This document shows, piece after piece, positions 19,383 to 53,194 of a stretch of DNA of 64,000 nt. The notes beneath the pieces were generated by a model. It had not been told where the DNA came from. It searched no databases and saw only the letters and a program-made list of their open reading frames with translations. Origin of the DNA: Diplonema japonicum (taxonomy: Eukaryota > Protista > Euglenozoa: Diplonemea); assembly GCA_964019335.1 (NCBI GenBank), contig OZ025671.1, forward strand, positions 372,001 through 436,000. The letters run 5' to 3'. The translations under genes and the position numbers were made by a program. The stretch's first letter is position 1; each line of letters starts with the position of its first letter.

Positions 19383-20327
19383 TTATTTCAGGATAGACCG
19401 CAAGGGCGAAGTCGCCGAGTTCTCCAAGCGCATCCTGAGGGTGGGGGGGTTTTCTATATTGCAGGGCAGGTTGTATATCCCTGGGACCTGCCGTGGATCG
19501 AGTGCTTCGGAGTCGTAAAGAAAGGTGCAAGGCTTGTGGCGGTACTCAGAGAGGCCGGGAGCGTTGAGGAGCCTGCTGAGCGGGTTGAAGTACCCGAGCT
19601 TCACGAGATGGGCATTGCTTGAAGGATCGATAACTTTGCAATAAACGACCTCCGGCCGCTGCTCAATGGTGAGCGGAGTCGCAGGCGACGACAGAGGGAA
19701 CCCGAAGGACCCCACCGTCGCTGCTGGGTTGAGTTCCCTTGCTTGGTGGTAGAGAGTGTGTTGTTCACCGGATTTAAGCCCAACCGCTGACTTGATAATG
19801 CTAAACGACTCATTCCCACGCAGACGGATAGACAGGTGCGGCCTTCCAGGTGTCTTCACAAGGAAATAGAAGTATTCAGATTGATAGTCAGATCTGGTGG
19901 GTGACGGTTCCAGGTCAAGCTCGTTGTCAGGGACTTCATGGTAAAGGCGTGTGATGCCTGTTGCGGTGGAGGAAGTTGCGGATCGGGAGGCGACTTCTTC
20001 GTAGAGGGCCTCCTCTTCGTCTTGGGTTTGCATGGCGTCGTGATCCCTTAGGAAAACAGCGAGAGAGGTGAAGCCGTTGTCGAAGGCAAGGTGTTGGGGT
20101 TTCATCCCTTCCACGTCCCTCTCGCCTATCTTCATCCCGTTTCTGCACAGTAGTTTCACAACAACATCGTGGCCGTTGGCAGCTGCCATGTGGAGGCCTG
20201 TCTGTTCGTTTCCATCCTTCAGCTTTGCCAGCGCCTCCTCTCCCCTCATCATGCTGTCAACACCTACTACATCTCCCTCGCTGCATGCTTCAAAAAACTC
20301 TGTCTGGAGCTTGTACCTCACAGACAT
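19383..20327 (-). CDS. Ankyrin-repeat protein with two C-terminal ubiquitin-like segments
   Basis: Ankyrin repeats FFEACSEGD, QTGLHMAAANGHDVVVKLL and KPQHLAFDNG. The C-terminal beta-grasp-like duplications (TLYHQARELNPAATVGSFGF; TFLYDSEALDPRQVPGIYNL) are an inference. Confidence 0.75.
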   Translation of the reverse strand: MSVRYKLQTEFFEACSEGDVVGVDSMMRGEEALAKLKDGNEQTGLHMAAANGHDVVVKLLCRNGMKIGERDVEGMKPQHLAFDNGFTSLAVFLRDHDAMQTQDEEEALYEEVASRSATSSTATGITRLYHEVPDNELDLEPSPTRSDYQSEYFYFLVKTPGRPHLSIRLRGNESFSIIKSAVGLKSGEQHTLYHQARELNPAATVGSFGFPLSSPATPLTIEQRPEVVYCKVIDPSSNAHLVKLGYFNPLSRLLNAPGLSEYRHKPCTFLYDSEALDPRQVPGIYNLPCNIENPPTLRMRLENSATSPLRSILK

Positions 20328-20744
20328 AGACAACACCAGACCCGCCCCGCTTGATGGATTTTTTTTTTTTTTTTTTCCGATGGAGGGAAGCGGAATTATA
20401 GTAATAATAAAAGACTTTATGAACAAGAGGGAAAAAAAAAAAAATAAAGGAAGAAAAACATAAATACAGAATAAAAAGAAAAAAAAAACGGATTTATTAG
20501 CAAGGGGTGAGAGACAGCGAGGGGTGGTTTAACAGAGACAGGAGAGAGAAAAAAAAATATATATGAGTTAAAGGAGGCCGGTGTTGGCGGCGCCCTGCAC
20601 AAGAACTGTCTACTTGATTACAGGGGGCGCACCGCGGCCGAGTTGTAGCTTCTTCTGCGTTCCGCGTCGTGTCCTTAATGCGTGCGGTGTACAGCTCAAC
20701 CCCAGCCGGGACGTCCCGGTACCAAGATTCTGCGCTCGCAGTTT

Positions 20745-20878
20745 GCTGCCTGTTCGTCACCCTGAGCATCTGCGTTACGTTCTTCCACTCGGGCGCTACC
20801 GGTGATGACCGACGAGGAGGTCAACAGCGAACAACACATCTGATGGTTTTCTTATATTTTCATGTTATCTCCACCACC
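20745..20878 (-). ncRNA. HDV-like (nested double pseudoknot) self-cleaving ribozyme
   Basis: P1 GGTGGTG (20878-20872) pairs with CATCACC (20807-20801). P2 GCTGTTG pairs with CAGGCAGC (one bulge). P3 ACC/GGT closes L3 TCCTCGTC. P1.1 is CC/GG. P4 is CGCCCGAGT/GCTCAGGGTG. J4/2 is ACGAA with the catalytic C at 20756. Confidence 0.85.
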
Positions 20879-20884
20879 TAAATC

Positions 20885-20954
20885 CGCCGGAGTGGGGTTT
20901 GAACCCGCTTCGCCTAGGTGCAGGGCAAAGCCCTCCCAACTAGACCACCCTGGC
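20885..20954 (-). tRNA. Degenerate tRNA-like sequence (pseudo-tRNA or SINE head) with Pol III A and B boxes
   Basis: GCCAGGG-TGGTCTAGTTGG (A box)..GGTTCAAACCC (B box)..CTCCGGC-G. The D arm pairs, the acceptor and T stems have mismatches, and the anticodon arm is irregular, so it is unlikely to be a functional tRNA. Confidence 0.7.
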
Positions 20955-20959
20955 CTTTG

Positions 20960-21004
<45 letters not shown>

Positions 21005-21083: not shown

Positions 21084-22406
21084 TCACCTAAAAGGAGCTG
21101 GGGGAGTTCGGAAGCGCGATCTTGGCTGCTGGCCAGAGGCGTTGTAGGCGGAATAGATGGTTTTTATCTGTTTTTTTTTTTCTTTTTTCTGTTGTAAAAA
21201 TCTTTTTCATCCCCTCAAACACACCGACTGATATTTCTTCGGAACGCCAATGCCGTTGTGGTTGCTGCTGTCGATGTCAAAGGATCGCATCCGCAGCACT
21301 GTGTCACCAGGGGATCTGGAACGATTGCGAGGGATTAAAGAAGCTGTGGATGGAGACGGGGTCCTGCTTTTCACAGACGGTGATCTACTGTAGTCGCTGG
21401 GTTGGGTTCGCTTCGAGGCGAGCGCACTACGCGGCTGCCTTGAGACCTCTTTGTGACCACCCTCAAGCTCTCTAGCCAACGCCTTGGAGAGCGAAACGAC
21501 TAGATCTACCTTAGCAGAATACATCCTGGCACCGTTCCCATTTTTTTTCACGAAATCGTGGAATAATGGGTCGCTCTGCAATTCTTGTGCTTTTTCGCAA
21601 AGCTCGATGATGGGGCCTCGGATGGACTTTGCCTTCGGAGCCGGGAGGGATCCCTTGCTCGTACTCTTTCTTTCAAACCCAGATAATTGCCGTTTTAACG
21701 ATTCCAGTATTGACTCCTTACCCTTCATGCTTTCTGTCAGGTTCTTTACTTTTTGCTTAAGCATTTGGTTTTCTTCCAGTATTCCATTGGACTCTTCCCT
21801 AGAAAGGTCGATTTGAGCATCGTTGTAGTAGCTTTCATCATCCCGCAGGGTTTTCAAAGCGGTTTGTGCGGTGTTGTATAAGCCTTCGAGGCGGGTGTTT
21901 TCTTTTGTTTTTTCTTTTAGTTTCAGGTTCAGATTTTGTATTTCTGTTTTGAGCCCGGTGGCATCCACGTGCTGGTGTTCCAGTTTCTTCTTCATTTTGC
22001 TTATAAGACGAAGGAGCTCTTCGTTCTTTTCCCGCGCGTCGCTCTCGCTTACAGCACGTAATCCTTGTATCACCTCCTCCCTTGGACGATGGTTAGCGCA
22101 GAGATATATCTCGCACACAGGGCATCTCCCAACCTCTTTCCCTTCTTCGACATGTTGCCTGCACACACGGCACAGAACTCCCCGTTGCACCCCGCATGGT
22201 TCTATTTTTACAACATTCGAATGCTCTCTGTAGCAGGTGTCTACGGGATGGGTTTTTAAATTCTTCTGCAGCAGCGGGATCTTCCCGACCTCCAGATCTA
22301 CCACGCACCTATCGCCTTCTTCTATTATCTTGCCCACCAAACCGTTCAAATGGAGGAATTGTTCCAACTTCAAACCCTCCACTTCCACCCATGAACCTTT
22401 TCGCAT
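21084..22406 (-). CDS. Hypothetical protein: SH3/KOW-like N-terminus, Cys/His zinc finger, coiled coil; exons 22406-21225 and 21167-21084, ~421 aa
   Basis: GSWVEVEGL..LNGLVGKI..RCVVDL and CRVC..CPVCEIYLCANH. A 57-nt GTGTGT..ACAG intron (21168-21224) removes the 21207 stop and adds IKTIYSAYNASGQQPRSRFRTPPAPFR*. Confidence 0.7.
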
Positions 22407-23070
22407 TTTTTTTTCTTTTTTTTTTTTTGCTGGTTTAAAGTGGTACGTACTCAGATCTTGAGGGTATCCATATTTGCCCAGTGGAGAGGCCGTAAGGCTC
22501 CAGTCTGCAGGGGGGCGTGCCACCCTCGGGACAGCACGTGGGCCGATGTTGTACCCCCTCCCCAGCAAAGTAACCTTAGCCAGTGGTTCGTGAAGCGCCT
22601 ATTGGCCGACAGCAAGAGATTTCCTTGCACAAAGCGAGCGAGCCAAGGTGCCCCCAGAACGGCCCTCCAGCCCCAAAGGACGCCAAGGTGAAGATTGGGA
22701 GGGTCTCCCAAGATTGGGAGTTTGTCACTCCGGTATTTTTCTCTCCGGAATTTTCGCTTTACAGTATTTTTTTCTTCTTTTTTTTTCCCAACGAAGGATT
22801 TTATGAAAAGAAGAATAACATGGTCATACAAAGAGAGGGAATGTGGGGGGGGGGGGGGGGGGGGAGATTTGTTTCGTGTTACCCCCCTTTTTTCTTTCCA
22901 ATTGCTTCTTCATAAGTTACCTCATCCAAAGCAAGGGGGGGGATTGAGCCCGAGATATTAAAAAGAACAAATATTTAATAAAAAAAAAGAAGAGTTTACA
23001 TATCGACCGTACATTACTTTATTCTTCCTTTCGTTGTAAAAAAAGAGAAGAAAAAGAAGAAGAAGGAAAG

Positions 23071-23684: not shown

Positions 23685-26605
23685 TCACTGCTGCTTTTCC
23701 CATTGGTTCAGGAACTCCCTCCAGTATTTCTTGGGCTGACCTTGGGCTTGGCCTTGACCCTGGTTCTGACCTTTTCTAGCAGGGCTTATATCTCTTCTAT
23801 GGGAGCCTTGTTTTTGGGCCTGCGGTGTTTGTTTTTGAACCTGAGGAGGTGTCTGTTGTGCTGGAGCTTGGTGTGCCCGTCCAGGTGTGACTGCATAGTG
23901 CCTCATGGAATGGGCCATAGGGGTTCGCATCTTAGGGACTACCGCAGCACTCGCTTCACTCCTCAGGTCAAGGGCACCAACCGTGTAGCTCGGTCCTATC
24001 GCTGAATGCAGTCGTGCCTCTAACTCCTGCGTCCTCTTCGACATGGCTTCTGCCTTCGCGTTAGCCACTGCCTCCGCTGTCTCTGCCCTTCGTACCATGT
24101 TCATGGCGTCCTGCAACGCTTGGCTCACTTCCGCCTGTGATGTGATGTGATGTGCAATATGTGAAGTGTGACGCATACCTCAACAGCTTTCATCTTGCTC
24201 GCTTTCTCGAAATCCTTTTTCCTCGGCTTCGAGGTCTCAGGTGTCATCCCATGCACCTCCGACGGGCTAATCGGTGGGCTGTCGCACGAGCTCTCCGGCA
24301 CAGGCGGCGGCGACTCCTCCCTCTCATCCGCGGCTATCACAGACGGTAGTGATGTAGTTGCTGCCGACAGCTGCGACATAGGTTCCAGCAGCTCATCTGT
24401 GGGCGTTGCGGACGCGATGGCGACTTCCACGGGCTCCGACTGCTGATGCCGAAGCCCCACTACCTCGGACATGAGGTTCTGTACAGCAGGCACGATGTAC
24501 GTGCCGTTGGGCCCCAGGTGCACCTTGATGCTGTCCTCGCTCGGAAAGGCGCTGACTGTGTCACTGCGGTCATCAAGGACCTGCTGCCCTATGTCGGTAA
24601 CTTGCGAAGACTGTGGAGCACTGCAGATGAAACTGTTTGCACTCATATTTTTGCTTGCCAACGTATTTCCGCTGCAAGCGGGCTTACCGCCCAAAGTGCT
24701 TGCTGGCTTGTCAACGTTGGACTGCTGTCGTGAATGGGAATGAAGCAGCTGATGCGATTGTTGGGTTGCAGGAAGGCTTTCCTGATAGATAGATGGCATG
24801 GAAGTAGTCGCGGTGGATTCGACTGTCGCACCGTCAGGTGGCGAGGGGCCGTCAGAGACAACACTCCTGTCGGCAGTGAAGCCTTTCGAGACCTCGCTGA
24901 TTGCGTCGTCGTTGTGGTGGGTGCGCAGTGCATCTGGCGACGGTGACGGTGCAGCTGTGCTGACCGGTGTGCCGTGGTAGAAAACTGGCGCGTTGGTGGA
25001 TTCGGCCCTCTTTGGAGGAGGCATGACCACAAGGGGTGAGGCCTTCTTGTACCTTTCGTGCACCTGCGGCGCAACGGGTGCGCCCCTACCTGGTGACACG
25101 TCCCGCCTTTCCTTTCCAGGCTGTGCTGCACTGAGGATCTTGAGGGCGGCGTCTACTAGGTCGCCGGCCTGCTTCACGGCGTTCTCGGCTCGCACTCTGC
25201 GTGGAATTCAAACCTCATAAAGCACATACCTGTCATCTTCTACAGCTGCTGCAGACTCTTGGACCTTCTTCTGCTCCGAGCGTGCTTTCTTTATTTGTCT
25301 ATTTATTTGTTCCATGGCATGCTTATTCCCCTCTGCTACTGCATGCATCTGCCCTGCCATTGTCGCATCCAGCGCTTGACGTTCCTGTGCAGCAAGAGCC
25401 GCTGCGTTCTGAGCTGCCATTCTTTCTCTTGTCGCCGCTTGCAAGGCCTGCTGGTTCTGCTCTTGCGTGTGCTGCAGAATCTGTGCCATGTCACTCGAGT
25501 ACAACTTGTTCTTCTGGCTGGCCTGCTGCAGCACTGCCTCAACACCCTCACGTTGCGCAATTGCATGCACAGCAGCCTGTTCTGCCAACAGCCTCTCACG
25601 CTTTGCCTGCTCTAGCAGCCGCTCTGCTTCCTGCTCTTTCTTCAAAGTGTATGCCGCAGCTTCTTTTTCTTTCTGTTCAGCAGCAGCGATGGCCGCAGCA
25701 GCCCGCTGTTCTGCCCGCCGTCTGGACCTCTCCTCATGCCCGCATCTTCTTGGTGGTGTCGGCATGGCGGCGGCCACGGGTGCATGGGGAAGTGTGATGG
25801 GGACGTAAGGCGTTTCCGTGTTTCCCTTCCCGAAGACGGACCTGTCGCTGATGGGAGCCACGGGCATTGGGGCAGGCAAAGAAACTGGTGTGGGTGTCTT
25901 TGCAGAAGGAACAGTGGAGGGCTTGGGTGTAGGCTTAGGAGAGGGCTTCGGCGTGGGTCTGGGAGTGGGCTTCGGAGTTGGTATCGGGGTGGTTTGTACA
26001 CCCGTGTCCTCTACTGGCGTAGCTTGGGTGGCAGCATGGATTTGAGGTGCTTGCATAGGAGTAAGCGTGTGCCGCTGCGTCTGGCGTGGCTCGGGGTGCA
26101 GGGGAGGTGGGGTTTGGTAGGGTGAAGGCTTTGGCGTCCAGTACCTCTTAGGGTGTATGGGTGGCCTAAGCGATACCTCTTCCTCTTCCTCTTCCTCGTA
26201 GCTCGACTCTTCCTCACTTTCGTACTGATGTCTCTGTGGCTGTTCATGCCCCTTTGCTGGCTGCGGTGCAAGTTCTTTCAAGATTTTTGCAGCTCTCCGT
26301 TTCGCTTCGGCAGGAGGGCACGCAGCGAGGAGGTCGGGGTCTATGTGGTGGATTTTCTTAGCGACGGCCTCTGCGTCAGCGTGGGAGTGCATCTTTGCCG
26401 GTCCAGATGAAAAGGGCCCCAGGGTGGAGGGGGGCCGTGCGGAGCAGTCGCCACATGACATCGTTGGGACACCGTGGATGCACACCCCGCCGCGCACGGG
26501 GGACACACCCATCTGGTTCAGCCCGGCTGCCTTGGCATCCGGCGGGGGGGGCATCATGGAAGGCTCCAACTCTGGCTCAGGTGCATAGTTCCTTATCTTC
26601 GACAT
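23685..26605 (-). CDS. Hypothetical Pro/Ser/Thr-rich and coiled-coil protein; exons 26605-25230, 25196-24179 and 24134-23685, ~947 aa
   Basis: Three track ORFs joined in frame by GTATG..CAG introns of 33 nt (25197-25229) and 44 nt (24135-24178). Confidence 0.75.
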
Positions 26606-53056: not shown

Positions 53057-53194
53057 GCACGAACTGTCTACTTGATTACAGGGGGCGCACCTCCCGGCCG
53101 CTCTGTAACTTATTCTGCGTTCCGCGTCGTGTCCTTAATACTTACCCGCTACCGGTGATGACCGACGAAGAGGTCAACAGCGAACAACCCCACC
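53057..53194 (-). repeat. Decayed second copy of the ribozyme/tail element at 20.6-20.9 kb
   Basis: 53057-53139 matches 20597-20679 and 53147-53188 matches 20794-20835; the 114 nt between them is replaced by 7 nt. Confidence 0.85.

What the first reader, a model, noticed from the sequence alone, without database searches (positions are those of the whole stretch)
20560..20954. tRNA-like module followed by a complete HDV-like self-cleaving ribozyme inside a polycistronic gene cluster
Seen (minus strand): a 70-nt tRNA-like unit with A and B boxes (20954-20885), a 6-nt spacer GATTTA, then every HDV-fold element in the right order. These are G1 at 20878, a 7-bp P1, a 43-nt J1/2 with its own helix (GATAACAT/GTGTTGTT), P2, P3 ACC/GGT, L3 TCCTCGTC, P1.1 CC/GG, P4, and J4/2 ACGAA with the catalytic C at 20756. 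A tail conserved in a second copy and a T-run follow. Known: HDV-like ribozymes cap the 5' ends of R2, RTE and trypanosomatid L1Tc/ingi retroposons, and phage theta ribozymes trim tRNA 3' trailers. Inference: either a SINE with a tRNA promoter and a LINE-derived ribozyme, or a eukaryotic tRNA-trailer ribozyme system. Being sense to the cluster, it would also cut the pre-mRNA ~205 nt after the upstream stop (21084) and ~550 nt before the ankyrin ATG. I know of no description of this in diplonemids.
Basis: partly seen in the sequence, partly recalled or inferred. Interest (0 to 1): 0.93.

Follow-up and report, generated by a model that had tools for sequence, protein, structure and literature searches.

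The report
Ribozyme-headed retroposon fused to tRNA-like RNA
The proposed HDV-like self-cleaving ribozyme is very probably real, but it is the standard 5' head of an abundant diplonemid retroposon family, and the tRNA-like piece in front of it is a one-off passenger, not a built-in promoter.

Summary

**What the HDV-like fold belongs to**
- The fold (G1 = 20878, minus strand) is the first ~130 nt of a ~335-nt non-coding retroposon. Its 23-nt core occurs exactly 486 times in the genome.
- All copies examined begin at G1.
- Two LINE families with APE and RT domains begin with a homologous core. P1, P2 and P4 have changed in a pair-preserving way, while P3, the L3 bases U-C-C..G, the P1.1 GG and the J4/2 C are kept.
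- The LINEs and the short element share the same 3' tail.
- Copies have T-rich target-site duplications. They lie sense to neighbouring genes in 20 of 22 scorable flanks.

**What the tRNA-like unit is**
- It fails tRNA thresholds and belongs to a separate repeat.
- It is joined to G1 only in this window.
- 5S rRNA precursors are joined to G1 at five other loci. A second tRNA-like copy is fused to a truncated LINE.

**Reading**
- These are chimeric retro-copies, made by template jump or RNA ligation, and they mark the retroposon RNA's 5' end at or within 1 nt of G1.
- This is the trypanosomatid L1Tc/NARTc and R2 strategy, here in a diplonemid.
- No cleavage or RNA-end data were available.
- Other first readers of this scan noted the same family elsewhere in this genome.

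The parts
20750..20878 (-). HDV-like ribozyme candidate. G1 is at 20878. Coordinates: P1 20878-20872 with 20807-20801; J1/2 20871-20828; P2 20827-20823 with 20754-20750; P3 20821-20819 with 20810-20808; L3 20818-20811; P1.1 20817-20816 with 20800-20799; P4 20795-20758; putative catalytic C at 20756.
   Evidence: Sequence read. The descriptor hit falls at 20878. The sub-threshold Rfam HDV_ribozyme alignment places the core and C20756 correctly. G1 equals the repeat's 5' boundary.
20558..20878 (-). One full-length copy of a ~335-nt non-coding retroposon (SINE-like, here called SINE-1). Its 3' end, TCCTTTAACTCATATAT(AT)n, is shared with LINE-A.
   Evidence: 1584 first-look candidates, and the top 40 are 95-98% identical; 486 exact copies of the 23-nt core; the shared LINE tail.
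20879..20884 (-). Junction GATTT + A. GATTT is the 3' end of the tRNA-like Pol III transcript, stopped inside its T-run terminator. The extra A is the base that precedes G1 in most copies.
   Evidence: Canonical tRNA-like copies continue GATTTTTT(T). GATTTA occurs only here and in L034. A is at -1 in 27 of 31 copies.
20885..20954 (-). tRNA-like unit with A- and B-box-like motifs. It is a retro-copied member of a separate repeat family, not a bona fide tRNA gene.
   Evidence: Rfam tRNA 18.1 bits against a cut-off of 29. ARAGORN makes no call. The MFE fold is not a cloverleaf. The family has 57 candidates and sits inside a ~500-600-nt repeat.
20955..21002 (-). 5' junction of the whole chimera: a T-run of 43 followed by CAAAG. 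This is the same 'T-run + CA(A)' signature seen at ordinary 5' junctions of the SINE and the LINEs.
20549..20557 (-). T9 run after the element's (AT)n end. It is probably the downstream half of a T-run target or target-site duplication.
   Evidence: T-rich TSDs of 7-9 nt are visible in other copies.
53058..53188 (-). Second, dead copy. It is 5'-truncated (starts near element position 48) and internally deleted, and it lacks the P1 5' strand, P4 and J4/2.
19383..20426 (-). Downstream gene on the same strand, an ankyrin-repeat protein.
21207..22568 (-). Upstream ORF on the same strand (453 aa, no Pfam match). Its stop codon is at 21207-21209.

Best explanation
Window 20878-20558 (minus strand) is one copy of an abundant ~335-nt non-autonomous retroposon of a diplonemid.

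**How the family works (inferred)**
- The first ~130 nt fold into an HDV-like self-cleaving ribozyme.
- The element is co-transcribed with the surrounding same-strand gene cluster.
- The ribozyme cuts immediately 5' of G1 and so frees the retroposon RNA from upstream transcript.
- The RNA is then copied by the reverse transcriptase of partner LINEs. These LINEs carry APE and RT domains, have the same 3' tail, and have a homologous ribozyme at their own 5' ends.
- The copy is inserted into T-rich sites, mostly in the sense orientation of genes.

**How the tRNA-like unit got there (inferred)**
- It is not part of the element.
- It is a Pol III transcript from another repeat family, ending GAUUU inside its terminator.
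- It became joined to the 5' end of a full-length retroposon RNA or cDNA, either by an end-to-end template jump of the RT or by RNA ligation onto the ribozyme-made 5'-OH.
- The joined molecule was integrated as one chimeric copy behind a T-run.

**Shown versus inferred**
- Shown: the anatomy, copy number, boundaries, shared LINE tail, between-family pair-preserving changes, orientation bias, and recurrence of Pol III-RNA-to-G1 chimeras.
- Inferred: actual self-cleavage, co-transcription, and the joining mechanism.
For: **1. Repeat boundary.** The top 40 genomic matches start at query positions 79-85, which is G1 plus or minus a few variable bases.

**2. Abundance.** The core ACCTCCTCGTCGGTCATCACCGG occurs 486 times. 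The reversed-pattern control gives 0.

**3. Homologous ribozyme at the exact 5' ends of LINE-A and LINE-B**.
- P1 is GGGGCU/GGCCCU in the LINEs and GGUGGUG/CAUCACC in the short element. Two positions changed on both sides.
- P2 is CUGGGGA/UCCCCAG against CUGUU/AACAG. Two positions changed on both sides.
- P4 has one double change and two single changes between LINE-A and LINE-B.
- P3 ACC/GGT, L3 U-C-C-N-N-G, the P1.1 GG and the J4/2 R-C-R-A-A are kept.

**4. Descriptor.** It hits these three families' starts and otherwise only chance-level sites.

**5. Rfam.** The HDV model aligns L3/P3, P1.1, P4 and C20756 to the corresponding model positions, though below threshold.

**6. Shared 3' tail** with a LINE whose ORF is on the ribozyme strand. 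That ORF has APE and RT domains. A transcriptome protein is 100% identical, and the nearest named relatives are from Diplonema papillatum.

**7. Retroposition marks.** T-rich TSDs of 7-9 nt and variable extra bases before G1. This matches Drosophila R2, where ribozyme cleavage prevents inheritance of junction variation (PMC3774820).

**8. Orientation.** 20 sense against 2 antisense flanks, and long same-strand runs of copies along contigs.

**9. Chimeras.**
- The tRNA-like-to-G1 junction is unique.
- 5S rRNA precursor is joined to G1 at 5 loci, 4 to the short element and 1 to a LINE.
- L034 is tRNA-like + AA + 5'-truncated LINE-A + the 3' half of the short element.
- These parallel the U6/L1 and fungal tripartite chimeras (PMC6789731, PMC2104539).

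**10. J1/2 length.** A 44-nt J1/2 is within the known range: P1 and P1' are 23 to more than 700 nt apart in R2 ribozymes (PMC3774820).
Against: - There is no biochemical or RNA-end evidence. Only assembled contigs were available, so starts and ends could not be seen.
- The Rfam HDV model scores far below its gathering score: 13.6 against 50 bits. Other HDV-like Rfam families do not hit, and the LINE-A 5' end has no HDV hit at all.
- A loose fold descriptor matches random sequence about 1.65 times per 64 kb.
- MFE folding is no better than shuffles, as expected for a pseudoknot.
- An A precedes G1 in 27 of 31 copies, in most LINE copies and in most chimeras. The RNA might therefore start at -1, by another mechanism, rather than at G1.
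- The covariation rests on only 3-4 independent families from one genome. The SINE-to-LINE alignment is mine, because MAFFT misaligned the core by one column.
- The TSD of the window's chimera is only a T-run and cannot be proven.
Confidence: 0.68

Rival explanations
1. Pol III cassette. The tRNA-like unit, and 5S rRNA at other loci, serves as an internal Pol III promoter. Transcription reads through the weakened GATTTA terminator into the retroposon. The ribozyme then cuts the promoter-bearing head off. Such fusions would be the functional source genes of the family.
For: - The unit has A- and B-box-like motifs, and only three T's remain of its terminator.
- The 335-nt body has no internal T4 run and ends in a T-run.
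- Six independent Pol III-gene-to-G1 fusions exist.
Against: - The tRNA-like junction is unique among at least 486 copies.
- The unit is out of its native repeat context. It carries the retroposition signature, T-run + CA, at its own 5' end, so it arose as a retro-copy.
- This copy has private substitutions (GGAG and AAACC) that most copies lack, so it is not their source.
- A partner LINE of more than 6 kb has the same ribozyme and cannot plausibly be a Pol III transcript.
- The absence of an internal T4 run is not statistically unusual.
Confidence: 0.12
2. The HDV-like fold is fortuitous or inactive. The shared 5' end of the short element and the LINEs is set by an internal promoter or transcription start at the A just before G1, or by another processing event. 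The conserved core would then be a promoter or protein-binding sequence, comparable to Pr77 viewed as a promoter.
For: - A at -1 is nearly constant.
- The Rfam score is sub-threshold.
- Descriptor matches occur by chance.
- There are no cleavage data.
Against: - Pair-preserving double changes occur in P1, P2 and P4 between families, while the catalytic-core bases stay fixed.
- L3 UCCUCG and J4/2 CGAA match the HDV core in the Rfam alignment.
- The bases further upstream of -1 are variable and not inherited, as expected if everything upstream is removed from the RNA.
Confidence: 0.15
3. Two independent events rather than one chimera. A tRNA-like RNA was retroposed on its own, and a copy of the short element later inserted exactly at its 3' end.
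For: - The element prefers T-rich sites, and the tRNA-like copy ends in TTT.
- The chimera's TSD cannot be read because both flanks are T-runs.
Against: - It needs an insertion within a few bases of a 70-nt target.
- The same architecture recurs with 5S rRNA at five loci, always at G1, and with the tRNA-like unit fused to a truncated LINE.
- No T-rich TSD lies between the unit and G1.
Confidence: 0.05
4. A tRNA-trailer processing ribozyme analogous to phage theta ribozymes, which trims the 3' trailer of a tRNA.
For: A ribozyme lies 6 nt after a tRNA-like unit.
Against: - The unit is not a tRNA by Rfam or ARAGORN.
- None of the nine other copies checked has the ribozyme.
- The ribozyme belongs to a 486-copy retroposon.
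Confidence: 0.01

Closest known systems
L1TcRz / Pr77 of Trypanosoma cruzi L1Tc and its non-autonomous NARTc, with the ingi/RIME/SIDER relatives (PMC3185411, PMC4035085, PMC3383444)
   Same: - An HDV-like ribozyme occupies the first nucleotides of an APE-type LINE and of its short non-coding derivative.
- The host is a euglenozoan with polycistronic transcription.
- The proposed role is release from co-transcripts.
   Different: - The ribozyme here is ~130 nt with a 44-nt J1/2 insert, against 77 nt.
- The host is a diplonemid and the LINE proteins are nearest to Diplonema papillatum elements.
- The 3' end is (AT)n rather than poly(A), and the target sites are T-runs.
- Sequence homology to Pr77 was not tested, because no reference sequence was at hand.
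- Promoter activity is unknown.
R2 retrotransposon 5' HDV-like ribozyme (PMC3774820)
   Same: - Same fold.
- The L3 and J4/2 core bases resemble HDV.
- P1-to-P1' spacing is long and variable.
- Non-templated bases at 5' junctions are variable and not inherited.
- The RT is known for template jumping (from my own knowledge).
   Different: - R2 is site-specific for 28S rDNA and uses a restriction-like endonuclease.
- The elements here have an APE endonuclease and are dispersed in T-rich intergenic sites.
U6/L1 chimeric pseudogenes and fungal bi- or tripartite chimeric retrogenes (PMC6789731, PMC2104539, PMC4476161)
   Same: - A full-length Pol III small RNA is fused head-to-tail to a LINE- or SINE-derived sequence and integrated as one copy.
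- A tripartite example exists here too (L034).
   Different: - In six of the seven chimeras found here the junction lies at the exact 5' end (G1) of a full-length element, not at variable truncation points.
- The partners are 5S rRNA precursor and a tRNA-like RNA.
- A ribozyme-made 5'-OH would be a natural RtcB substrate. This link is my inference and is untested.
tRNA-derived SINEs
   Same: A tRNA-like head followed by a body with a LINE-matched 3' tail, which is the architecture from which SINEs are thought to arise.
   Different: The head is present in one copy only. The amplifying family has no tRNA head, and its 5' end is a ribozyme.
Theta ribozymes of gut phages (PMC10879173)
   Same: A minimal HDV-like motif next to a tRNA-like sequence.
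   Different: - There the association with tRNAs is systematic. Here it is a single accidental junction.
- The ribozyme here is large and belongs to a retroposon.

Membership tests
HDV-like self-cleaving ribozymes | Nested double pseudoknot, with P1, P2, P3, L3, P1 3' strand, P1.1, P4, J4/2 and P2 3' strand in the canonical order. | tested here: met
   All elements are present with standard pairs in the window copy and in LINE-A and LINE-B. The descriptor hit falls at 20878.
HDV-like self-cleaving ribozymes | Conserved catalytic core: L3 beginning U-C-C with a G near its 3' side, a GG after P1 that forms P1.1, and a C in J4/2. | tested here: met
   L3 is UCCUCGUC in the short element, UCCACGU in LINE-A and UCCAAGU in LINE-B. 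GG is invariant. J4/2 is ACGAA or GCAAA. The Rfam HDV alignment puts C20756 on the model's J4/2 C.
HDV-like self-cleaving ribozymes | Helices supported by compensatory change. | tested here: met
   Between the short element and the LINEs, 2 double changes in P1 and 2 in P2. Between LINE-A and LINE-B, 1 double and 2 single changes in P4. SINE-2 shifts the P4 bulge register. Only 3-4 independent lineages, aligned by hand.
HDV-like self-cleaving ribozymes | Match to a curated covariance model at its gathering score. | tested here: not met
   RF00094 scores 13.6 bits against 50, E = 7.3. No other HDV-like family scores at E <= 10. The 44-nt J1/2 insert and the pseudoknot are poorly handled by these models, so this test is weak.
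HDV-like self-cleaving ribozymes | Site-specific self-cleavage 5' of G1 that yields a 5'-OH and a 2',3'-cyclic phosphate. | not testable with these tools
   Only contig-level runs were available. Indirect support: element copies and six chimera junctions begin at G1.
Ribozyme-headed non-LTR retroposons (L1Tc/NARTc, R2 type) | The ribozyme lies at the exact 5' end of a LINE and of its non-autonomous partner, and the two share a 3' end. | tested here: met
tRNA gene | Passes tRNA detectors and folds as a cloverleaf with a 7-nt anticodon loop. | tested here: not met
   Rfam 18.1 bits against 29. ARAGORN makes no call, here or in canonical copies. The MFE fold is not a cloverleaf.
tRNA-derived SINE | The tRNA-related head is part of the amplified unit. 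| tested here: not met
   The junction is unique in the genome. 30 of the 31 copies inspected have unrelated upstream DNA.
Chimeric retro-copies (U6/L1 type) | A complete small Pol III RNA is fused to a retroposon sequence, the pattern recurs at independent loci, and each fusion is integrated as one unit. | tested here: met
   Window; L034; five 5S junctions. 5S was verified by Rfam at 93.5 bits. The native 5S trailer is AAACTTTT. A common TSD is inconclusive because the flanks are T-runs.
Theta-type tRNA-trailer ribozymes | Systematic placement downstream of tRNA genes. | tested here: not met

The most novel reading that the evidence does not exclude
The ribozyme-made 5'-OH at G1 may make these retroposon RNAs preferred substrates for an RtcB-type ligase, or for end-to-end template jumps. 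Either route would join them to nascent Pol III transcripts such as 5S precursor or the tRNA-like RNA. Some of the resulting chimeras, this window's among them, would then act as Pol III-driven source genes that cut off their own promoter. That would be a route by which ribozyme-headed retroposons repeatedly capture and shed Pol III promoters, and a living intermediate of SINE birth.
Probability: 0.12. Interest if true: 0.8.

Novelty: new member of a known kind. Interest (0 to 1): 0.5.

Why it matters
- It would extend ribozyme-processed non-LTR retroposons from trypanosomatids and animals to diplonemids, a very abundant but genomically little-known marine group.
- It offers a compact system for study: a ~335-nt element with about 500 intact cores, plus two partner LINEs.
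- The element combines three traits: T-run targeting, sense orientation within polycistrons, and 5' self-cleavage. Together these would explain how a promoter-less element keeps being transcribed.
- The recurrent Pol III-RNA-to-G1 chimeras are a genomic record of the RNA's 5' end. They give a testable link between ribozyme-made 5'-OH ends and chimeric retro-copy formation.
- In the library searched, no paper held both 'HDV-like ribozyme' and 'diplonemid'. The Diplonema papillatum genome paper does not contain the word ribozyme.

Tried and rejected
- **Rfam gathering scan of the window:** nothing.
- **ARAGORN:** its only call, tRNA-Gly at 24327-24404(+), lies in GC-rich coding-like sequence and is unsupported by Rfam.
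- **MFE folding:** z-scores near 0, uninformative for pseudoknots.
- **Sequencing runs:** all are kept as contigs and none is on record as RNA. The ratio of repeat depth to flank depth is similar in the 'RNA?' runs and the DNA run, so no expression or end information could be drawn.
- **MAFFT alignment of the short element with the LINEs:** it shifted the core by one column. A LINE-only alignment shifted P1. I therefore did not use the count of structure pairs and made the pair tables by script.
- **Metagenome scan** with a LINE-type core pattern: one hit, which looks like an unrelated chance match.
- **Other LINE families' 5' regions:** six were fetched and gave no descriptor hit, but their true 5' ends were not mapped.
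Smaller requests worked.
- **OTU domain** reported by another reader: not found in LINE-A at E <= 0.01, but present in related transcriptome proteins.
- **Trans-splicing as the origin of the 5' end:** rejected as the general explanation, because SL-bearing copies are a minority and carry the full 39-nt leader.
Full report
**What is there.** On the minus strand the region reads, 5' to 3':
- a run of 43 T (21002-20960) followed by CAAAG;
- a 70-nt tRNA-like unit (20954-20885);
- the linker GATTTA;
- from G at 20878, every element of an HDV-type fold in canonical order, ending with the P2 3' strand at 20754-20750.

Two details differ:
- The first in-frame stop of the upstream same-strand ORF is at 21207-21209, not 21084.
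- The 'second copy' is a truncated, internally deleted fragment at 53058-53188.

The downstream ORF is indeed an ankyrin-repeat protein.

**The ribozyme-like stretch is the head of a repeat.**
- A search of the window's own 62.5-Mb genome with 20960-20560 gave 1584 first-look candidates. The 40 scored matches are 95-98% identical, and all start at query positions 79-85, that is at G1 plus at most four variable bases.
- The unit is ~335 nt long and ends in TCCTTTAACTCATATAT(AT)n.
- The 23-nt core ACCTCCTCGTCGGTCATCACCGG occurs exactly 486 times. The reversed pattern occurs 0 times.
- Flanks of 31 copies show unrelated upstream DNA, often T-runs. One to a few variable bases (TTCA, TTTA, TCCA, AAAA and others) sit before G1.
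- Where the flanks are not pure T, T-rich target-site duplications of 7-9 nt are visible: L002 TTTATTT, L003 ATTCTTT, L007 ATTTCTTTT, L014 TTTTATTT, L023 TCTATTT.
- These are marks of target-primed retroposition.

**Partner LINEs and strand.**
- A LINE (L053; ORF of 1948 aa with APE endonuclease and RT domains) ends with the same TTCCTTTAACTCATATAT tail. Its ORF runs in the orientation of the ribozyme strand, so that strand is the sense strand.
- Its copies (LINE-A) and a second family that is 79% identical at the 5' end (LINE-B) begin uniformly with GGGGCTGG, again behind a T-run plus a few A-rich bases.
- A transcriptome protein in EukProt is 100% identical to LINE-A. The nearest named relatives are Diplonema papillatum LINE proteins at 34-49% identity.
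- Some LINE copies carry a 39-nt spliced-leader-like sequence ending CAGTTTCTGTACTTTATTG.
- From these two points I take the organism to be a diplonemid other than D. papillatum.

**Evidence that the fold is meaningful.** Alone it is not significant. A loose descriptor of my own gives 1.65 hits per 64 kb of simulated sequence, and MFE folding is no better than shuffles. Three things raise it well above chance.

1. *Position.* In 240 kb of fetched loci the descriptor hits the exact first base of 35 short-element copies, 11 LINE-A copies and 5 LINE-B copies. It gives 6 other hits, which is the chance expectation.

2. *Pair-preserving change between families*:

| Element | Short element | LINE-A / LINE-B |
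|---|---|---|
| P3 | ACC/GGT | ACC/GGT |
| L3 | UCCUCGUC | UCCACGU / UCCAAGU |
| P1.1 | GG | GG |
| J4/2 | ACGAA | GCAAA |
| P1 | GGUGGUG/CAUCACC | GGGGCU/GGCCCU |
| P2 | CUGUU/AACAG | CUGGGGA/UCCCCAG |

   - P1: positions 3 and 5 changed on both sides, and positions 1 and 6 became wobbles.
   - P2: two positions changed on both sides.
   - P4: LINE-A and LINE-B differ by one double and two single pair-preserving changes.
   - A divergent subfamily of the short element shifts the P4 bulge register.

3. *Rfam alignment.* In a narrow scan the Rfam HDV_ribozyme model aligns L3/P3, P1.1, P4 and C20756 to the corresponding model positions. The score is only 13.6 bits against a gathering score of 50. 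The model cannot span the 44-nt J1/2 insert. A spacing of that size is normal for retrotransposon HDV-like ribozymes, where P1 and P1' lie 23 to more than 700 nt apart in R2 (PMC3774820).

**The tRNA-like unit.**
- It scores 18.1 bits on Rfam tRNA against a cut-off of 29. ARAGORN does not call it here or elsewhere. It does not fold as a cloverleaf.
- It is a family of its own, with 57 candidates.
- In canonical copies it sits inside a ~500-600-nt dispersed repeat and ends in GATTTTTT(T), a Pol III-type terminator.
- None of nine other copies is followed by the retroposon. The junction with G1 is unique in the genome.
- The ending GATTTA occurs only here and in L034.
- L034 reads: T-run, CA, tRNA-like unit, AA, about 750 nt of the LINE-A 3' end, then the 3' half of the short element. 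It is a tripartite chimera.

**5S rRNA chimeras.**
It holds a complete 5S rRNA (Rfam 93.5 bits), its trailer AAAC, an A, and then G1 of a short-element subfamily.
- A pattern search found five such junctions in all. Four are to the short element and one is to a LINE, and every one is at G1.
- Native 5S copies continue AAACTTTT.

**How I read the chimeras.**
- Pol III primary transcripts are repeatedly found joined to the very 5' end of full-length retroposon RNA, and the product is integrated as one unit with the family's usual 5' junction signature.
- This is the pattern of U6/L1 and fungal chimeric retrogenes (PMC6789731, PMC2104539). Those are explained by RT template jumps, or by RtcB ligation of a 2',3'-cyclic-phosphate end to a 5'-OH.
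- HDV-type cleavage leaves exactly such a 5'-OH. This is established chemistry, but its relevance here is my inference.
- The chimeras are indirect in-genome evidence that the RNA's 5' end lies at G1.

**Genomic behaviour.**
- Of 22 flanks with a clear coding strand, 20 are sense to the element (two-sided binomial p about 1e-4).
- The 486 core matches form long same-strand runs along contigs, as expected for insertion into sense-strand T tracts of directional gene clusters.
- That placement would guarantee co-transcription. The ribozyme would then release the element RNA, as proposed for L1Tc/NARTc in Trypanosoma cruzi (PMC3185411, PMC4035085).

**Caveats.**
- No cleavage or RNA-end data exist. 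The runs found were contigs only.
- An A precedes G1 in 27 of 31 copies, in most LINE copies and in most chimeras. It may be added by the RT or at the joining step. It could also mean that the RNA starts one base upstream, which a ribozyme cutting at G1 would not explain.
- The covariation comes from few lineages within one genome and rests on a hand-made alignment.
No cross-species test was possible.

**Verdict.**
This is a LINE-related HDV-like ribozyme at the head of a SINE-like retroposon, but the tRNA-like unit is a co-retroposed passenger specific to this copy. It is neither the family's promoter nor a tRNA-trailer system.
- The kind of element is known (L1Tc/NARTc, R2). Its presence in a diplonemid and the G1-anchored Pol III chimeras are new as far as the searched literature goes.
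- Other first readers of this scan flagged the same family on other pieces of this genome.

Noticed in passing
L055 (C30:602299-605704), L074 (C27:396400-397100), L089 (C3:787300-789100): Some LINE copies of three families begin with a complete 39-nt spliced-leader-like sequence (…CCAACGATTCTAAAGCTACAGTTTCTGTACTTTATTG) fused to the LINE 5' region. In LINE-A and LINE-B this replaces the first one or two G. These look like retro-copies of trans-spliced LINE mRNAs.
   Followed up: partly
L087 (C52:220200-221700) and L088 (C51:86700-88300), ~200-330 nt upstream of the first ATG: Two other LINE families (ORFs of 1480 and 1461 aa) share a structured leader. A long-range helix shows a compensatory change: GTACTACTTGG…CCAAGTAGTAC against GTACGACTTGG…CCAAGTCGTAC. 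It encloses CTGGCCGGCCCC…GGCCGGCC. This may be a different ribozyme or RNA element.
   Followed up: no
flanks; The base just before G1 is A in 27 of 31 short-element copies, in most LINE copies and in most Pol III-RNA chimeras, often as CA or an A-run after a T-run. The origin is unexplained. Candidates are untemplated addition, oligoadenylated partner RNA, or an RNA start at -1.
   Followed up: partly
L005 (C28:65936-69259), minus strand ~1884-1814: A tRNA-Lys(UUU) gene (Rfam 36.6 bits) is joined in its T arm to G1 of a short-element copy. The element's GGTGG stands in for the tRNA's 3' acceptor strand, which looks like microhomology-mediated 5' joining or insertion into the gene.
   Followed up: partly
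L032 1150-1700 and L033, L035-L040: The tRNA-like unit lies near the 3' end of a ~500-600-nt dispersed repeat. That repeat itself starts after a T-run and holds a second B-box-like GGTTCGATCCC ~60 nt upstream. Its nature is unknown.
   Followed up: partly
L080, L081, L083 (5S loci): Further 5S rRNA copies, with trailer AAACTT or AAACTTTT, are fused to other sequences. One partner is a ~45-nt unit, CAGGCGTCCTGCCACATACCGCAGGTACCCTTAAATGTCTC, which also occurs between T-runs upstream of short-element copies in L027 and L028. 5S retro-copies seem common: the first look gave 3289 rough candidates.
   Followed up: no
window 24327-24404 (+): ARAGORN calls a 78-nt tRNA-Gly(GCC) inside GC-rich, coding-like sequence. 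Rfam finds no tRNA there at the gathering score, so it is probably a false positive.
   Followed up: partly
window 20716-20703 (-): The body of the short element contains a perfect 14-nt palindrome, CCGGGACGTCCCGG. It may be a hairpin used for RT recognition.
   Followed up: no
window 49430 (+): A second hit of my loose HDV descriptor falls inside coding-like sequence. It has no repeat boundary and is consistent with the chance rate.
   Followed up: partly
L023 and L025 (C104:295193-298519 and C104:3340-6666): Two short-element loci on one contig have identical flanks on both sides. This is a segmental duplication rather than two insertions.
   Followed up: no
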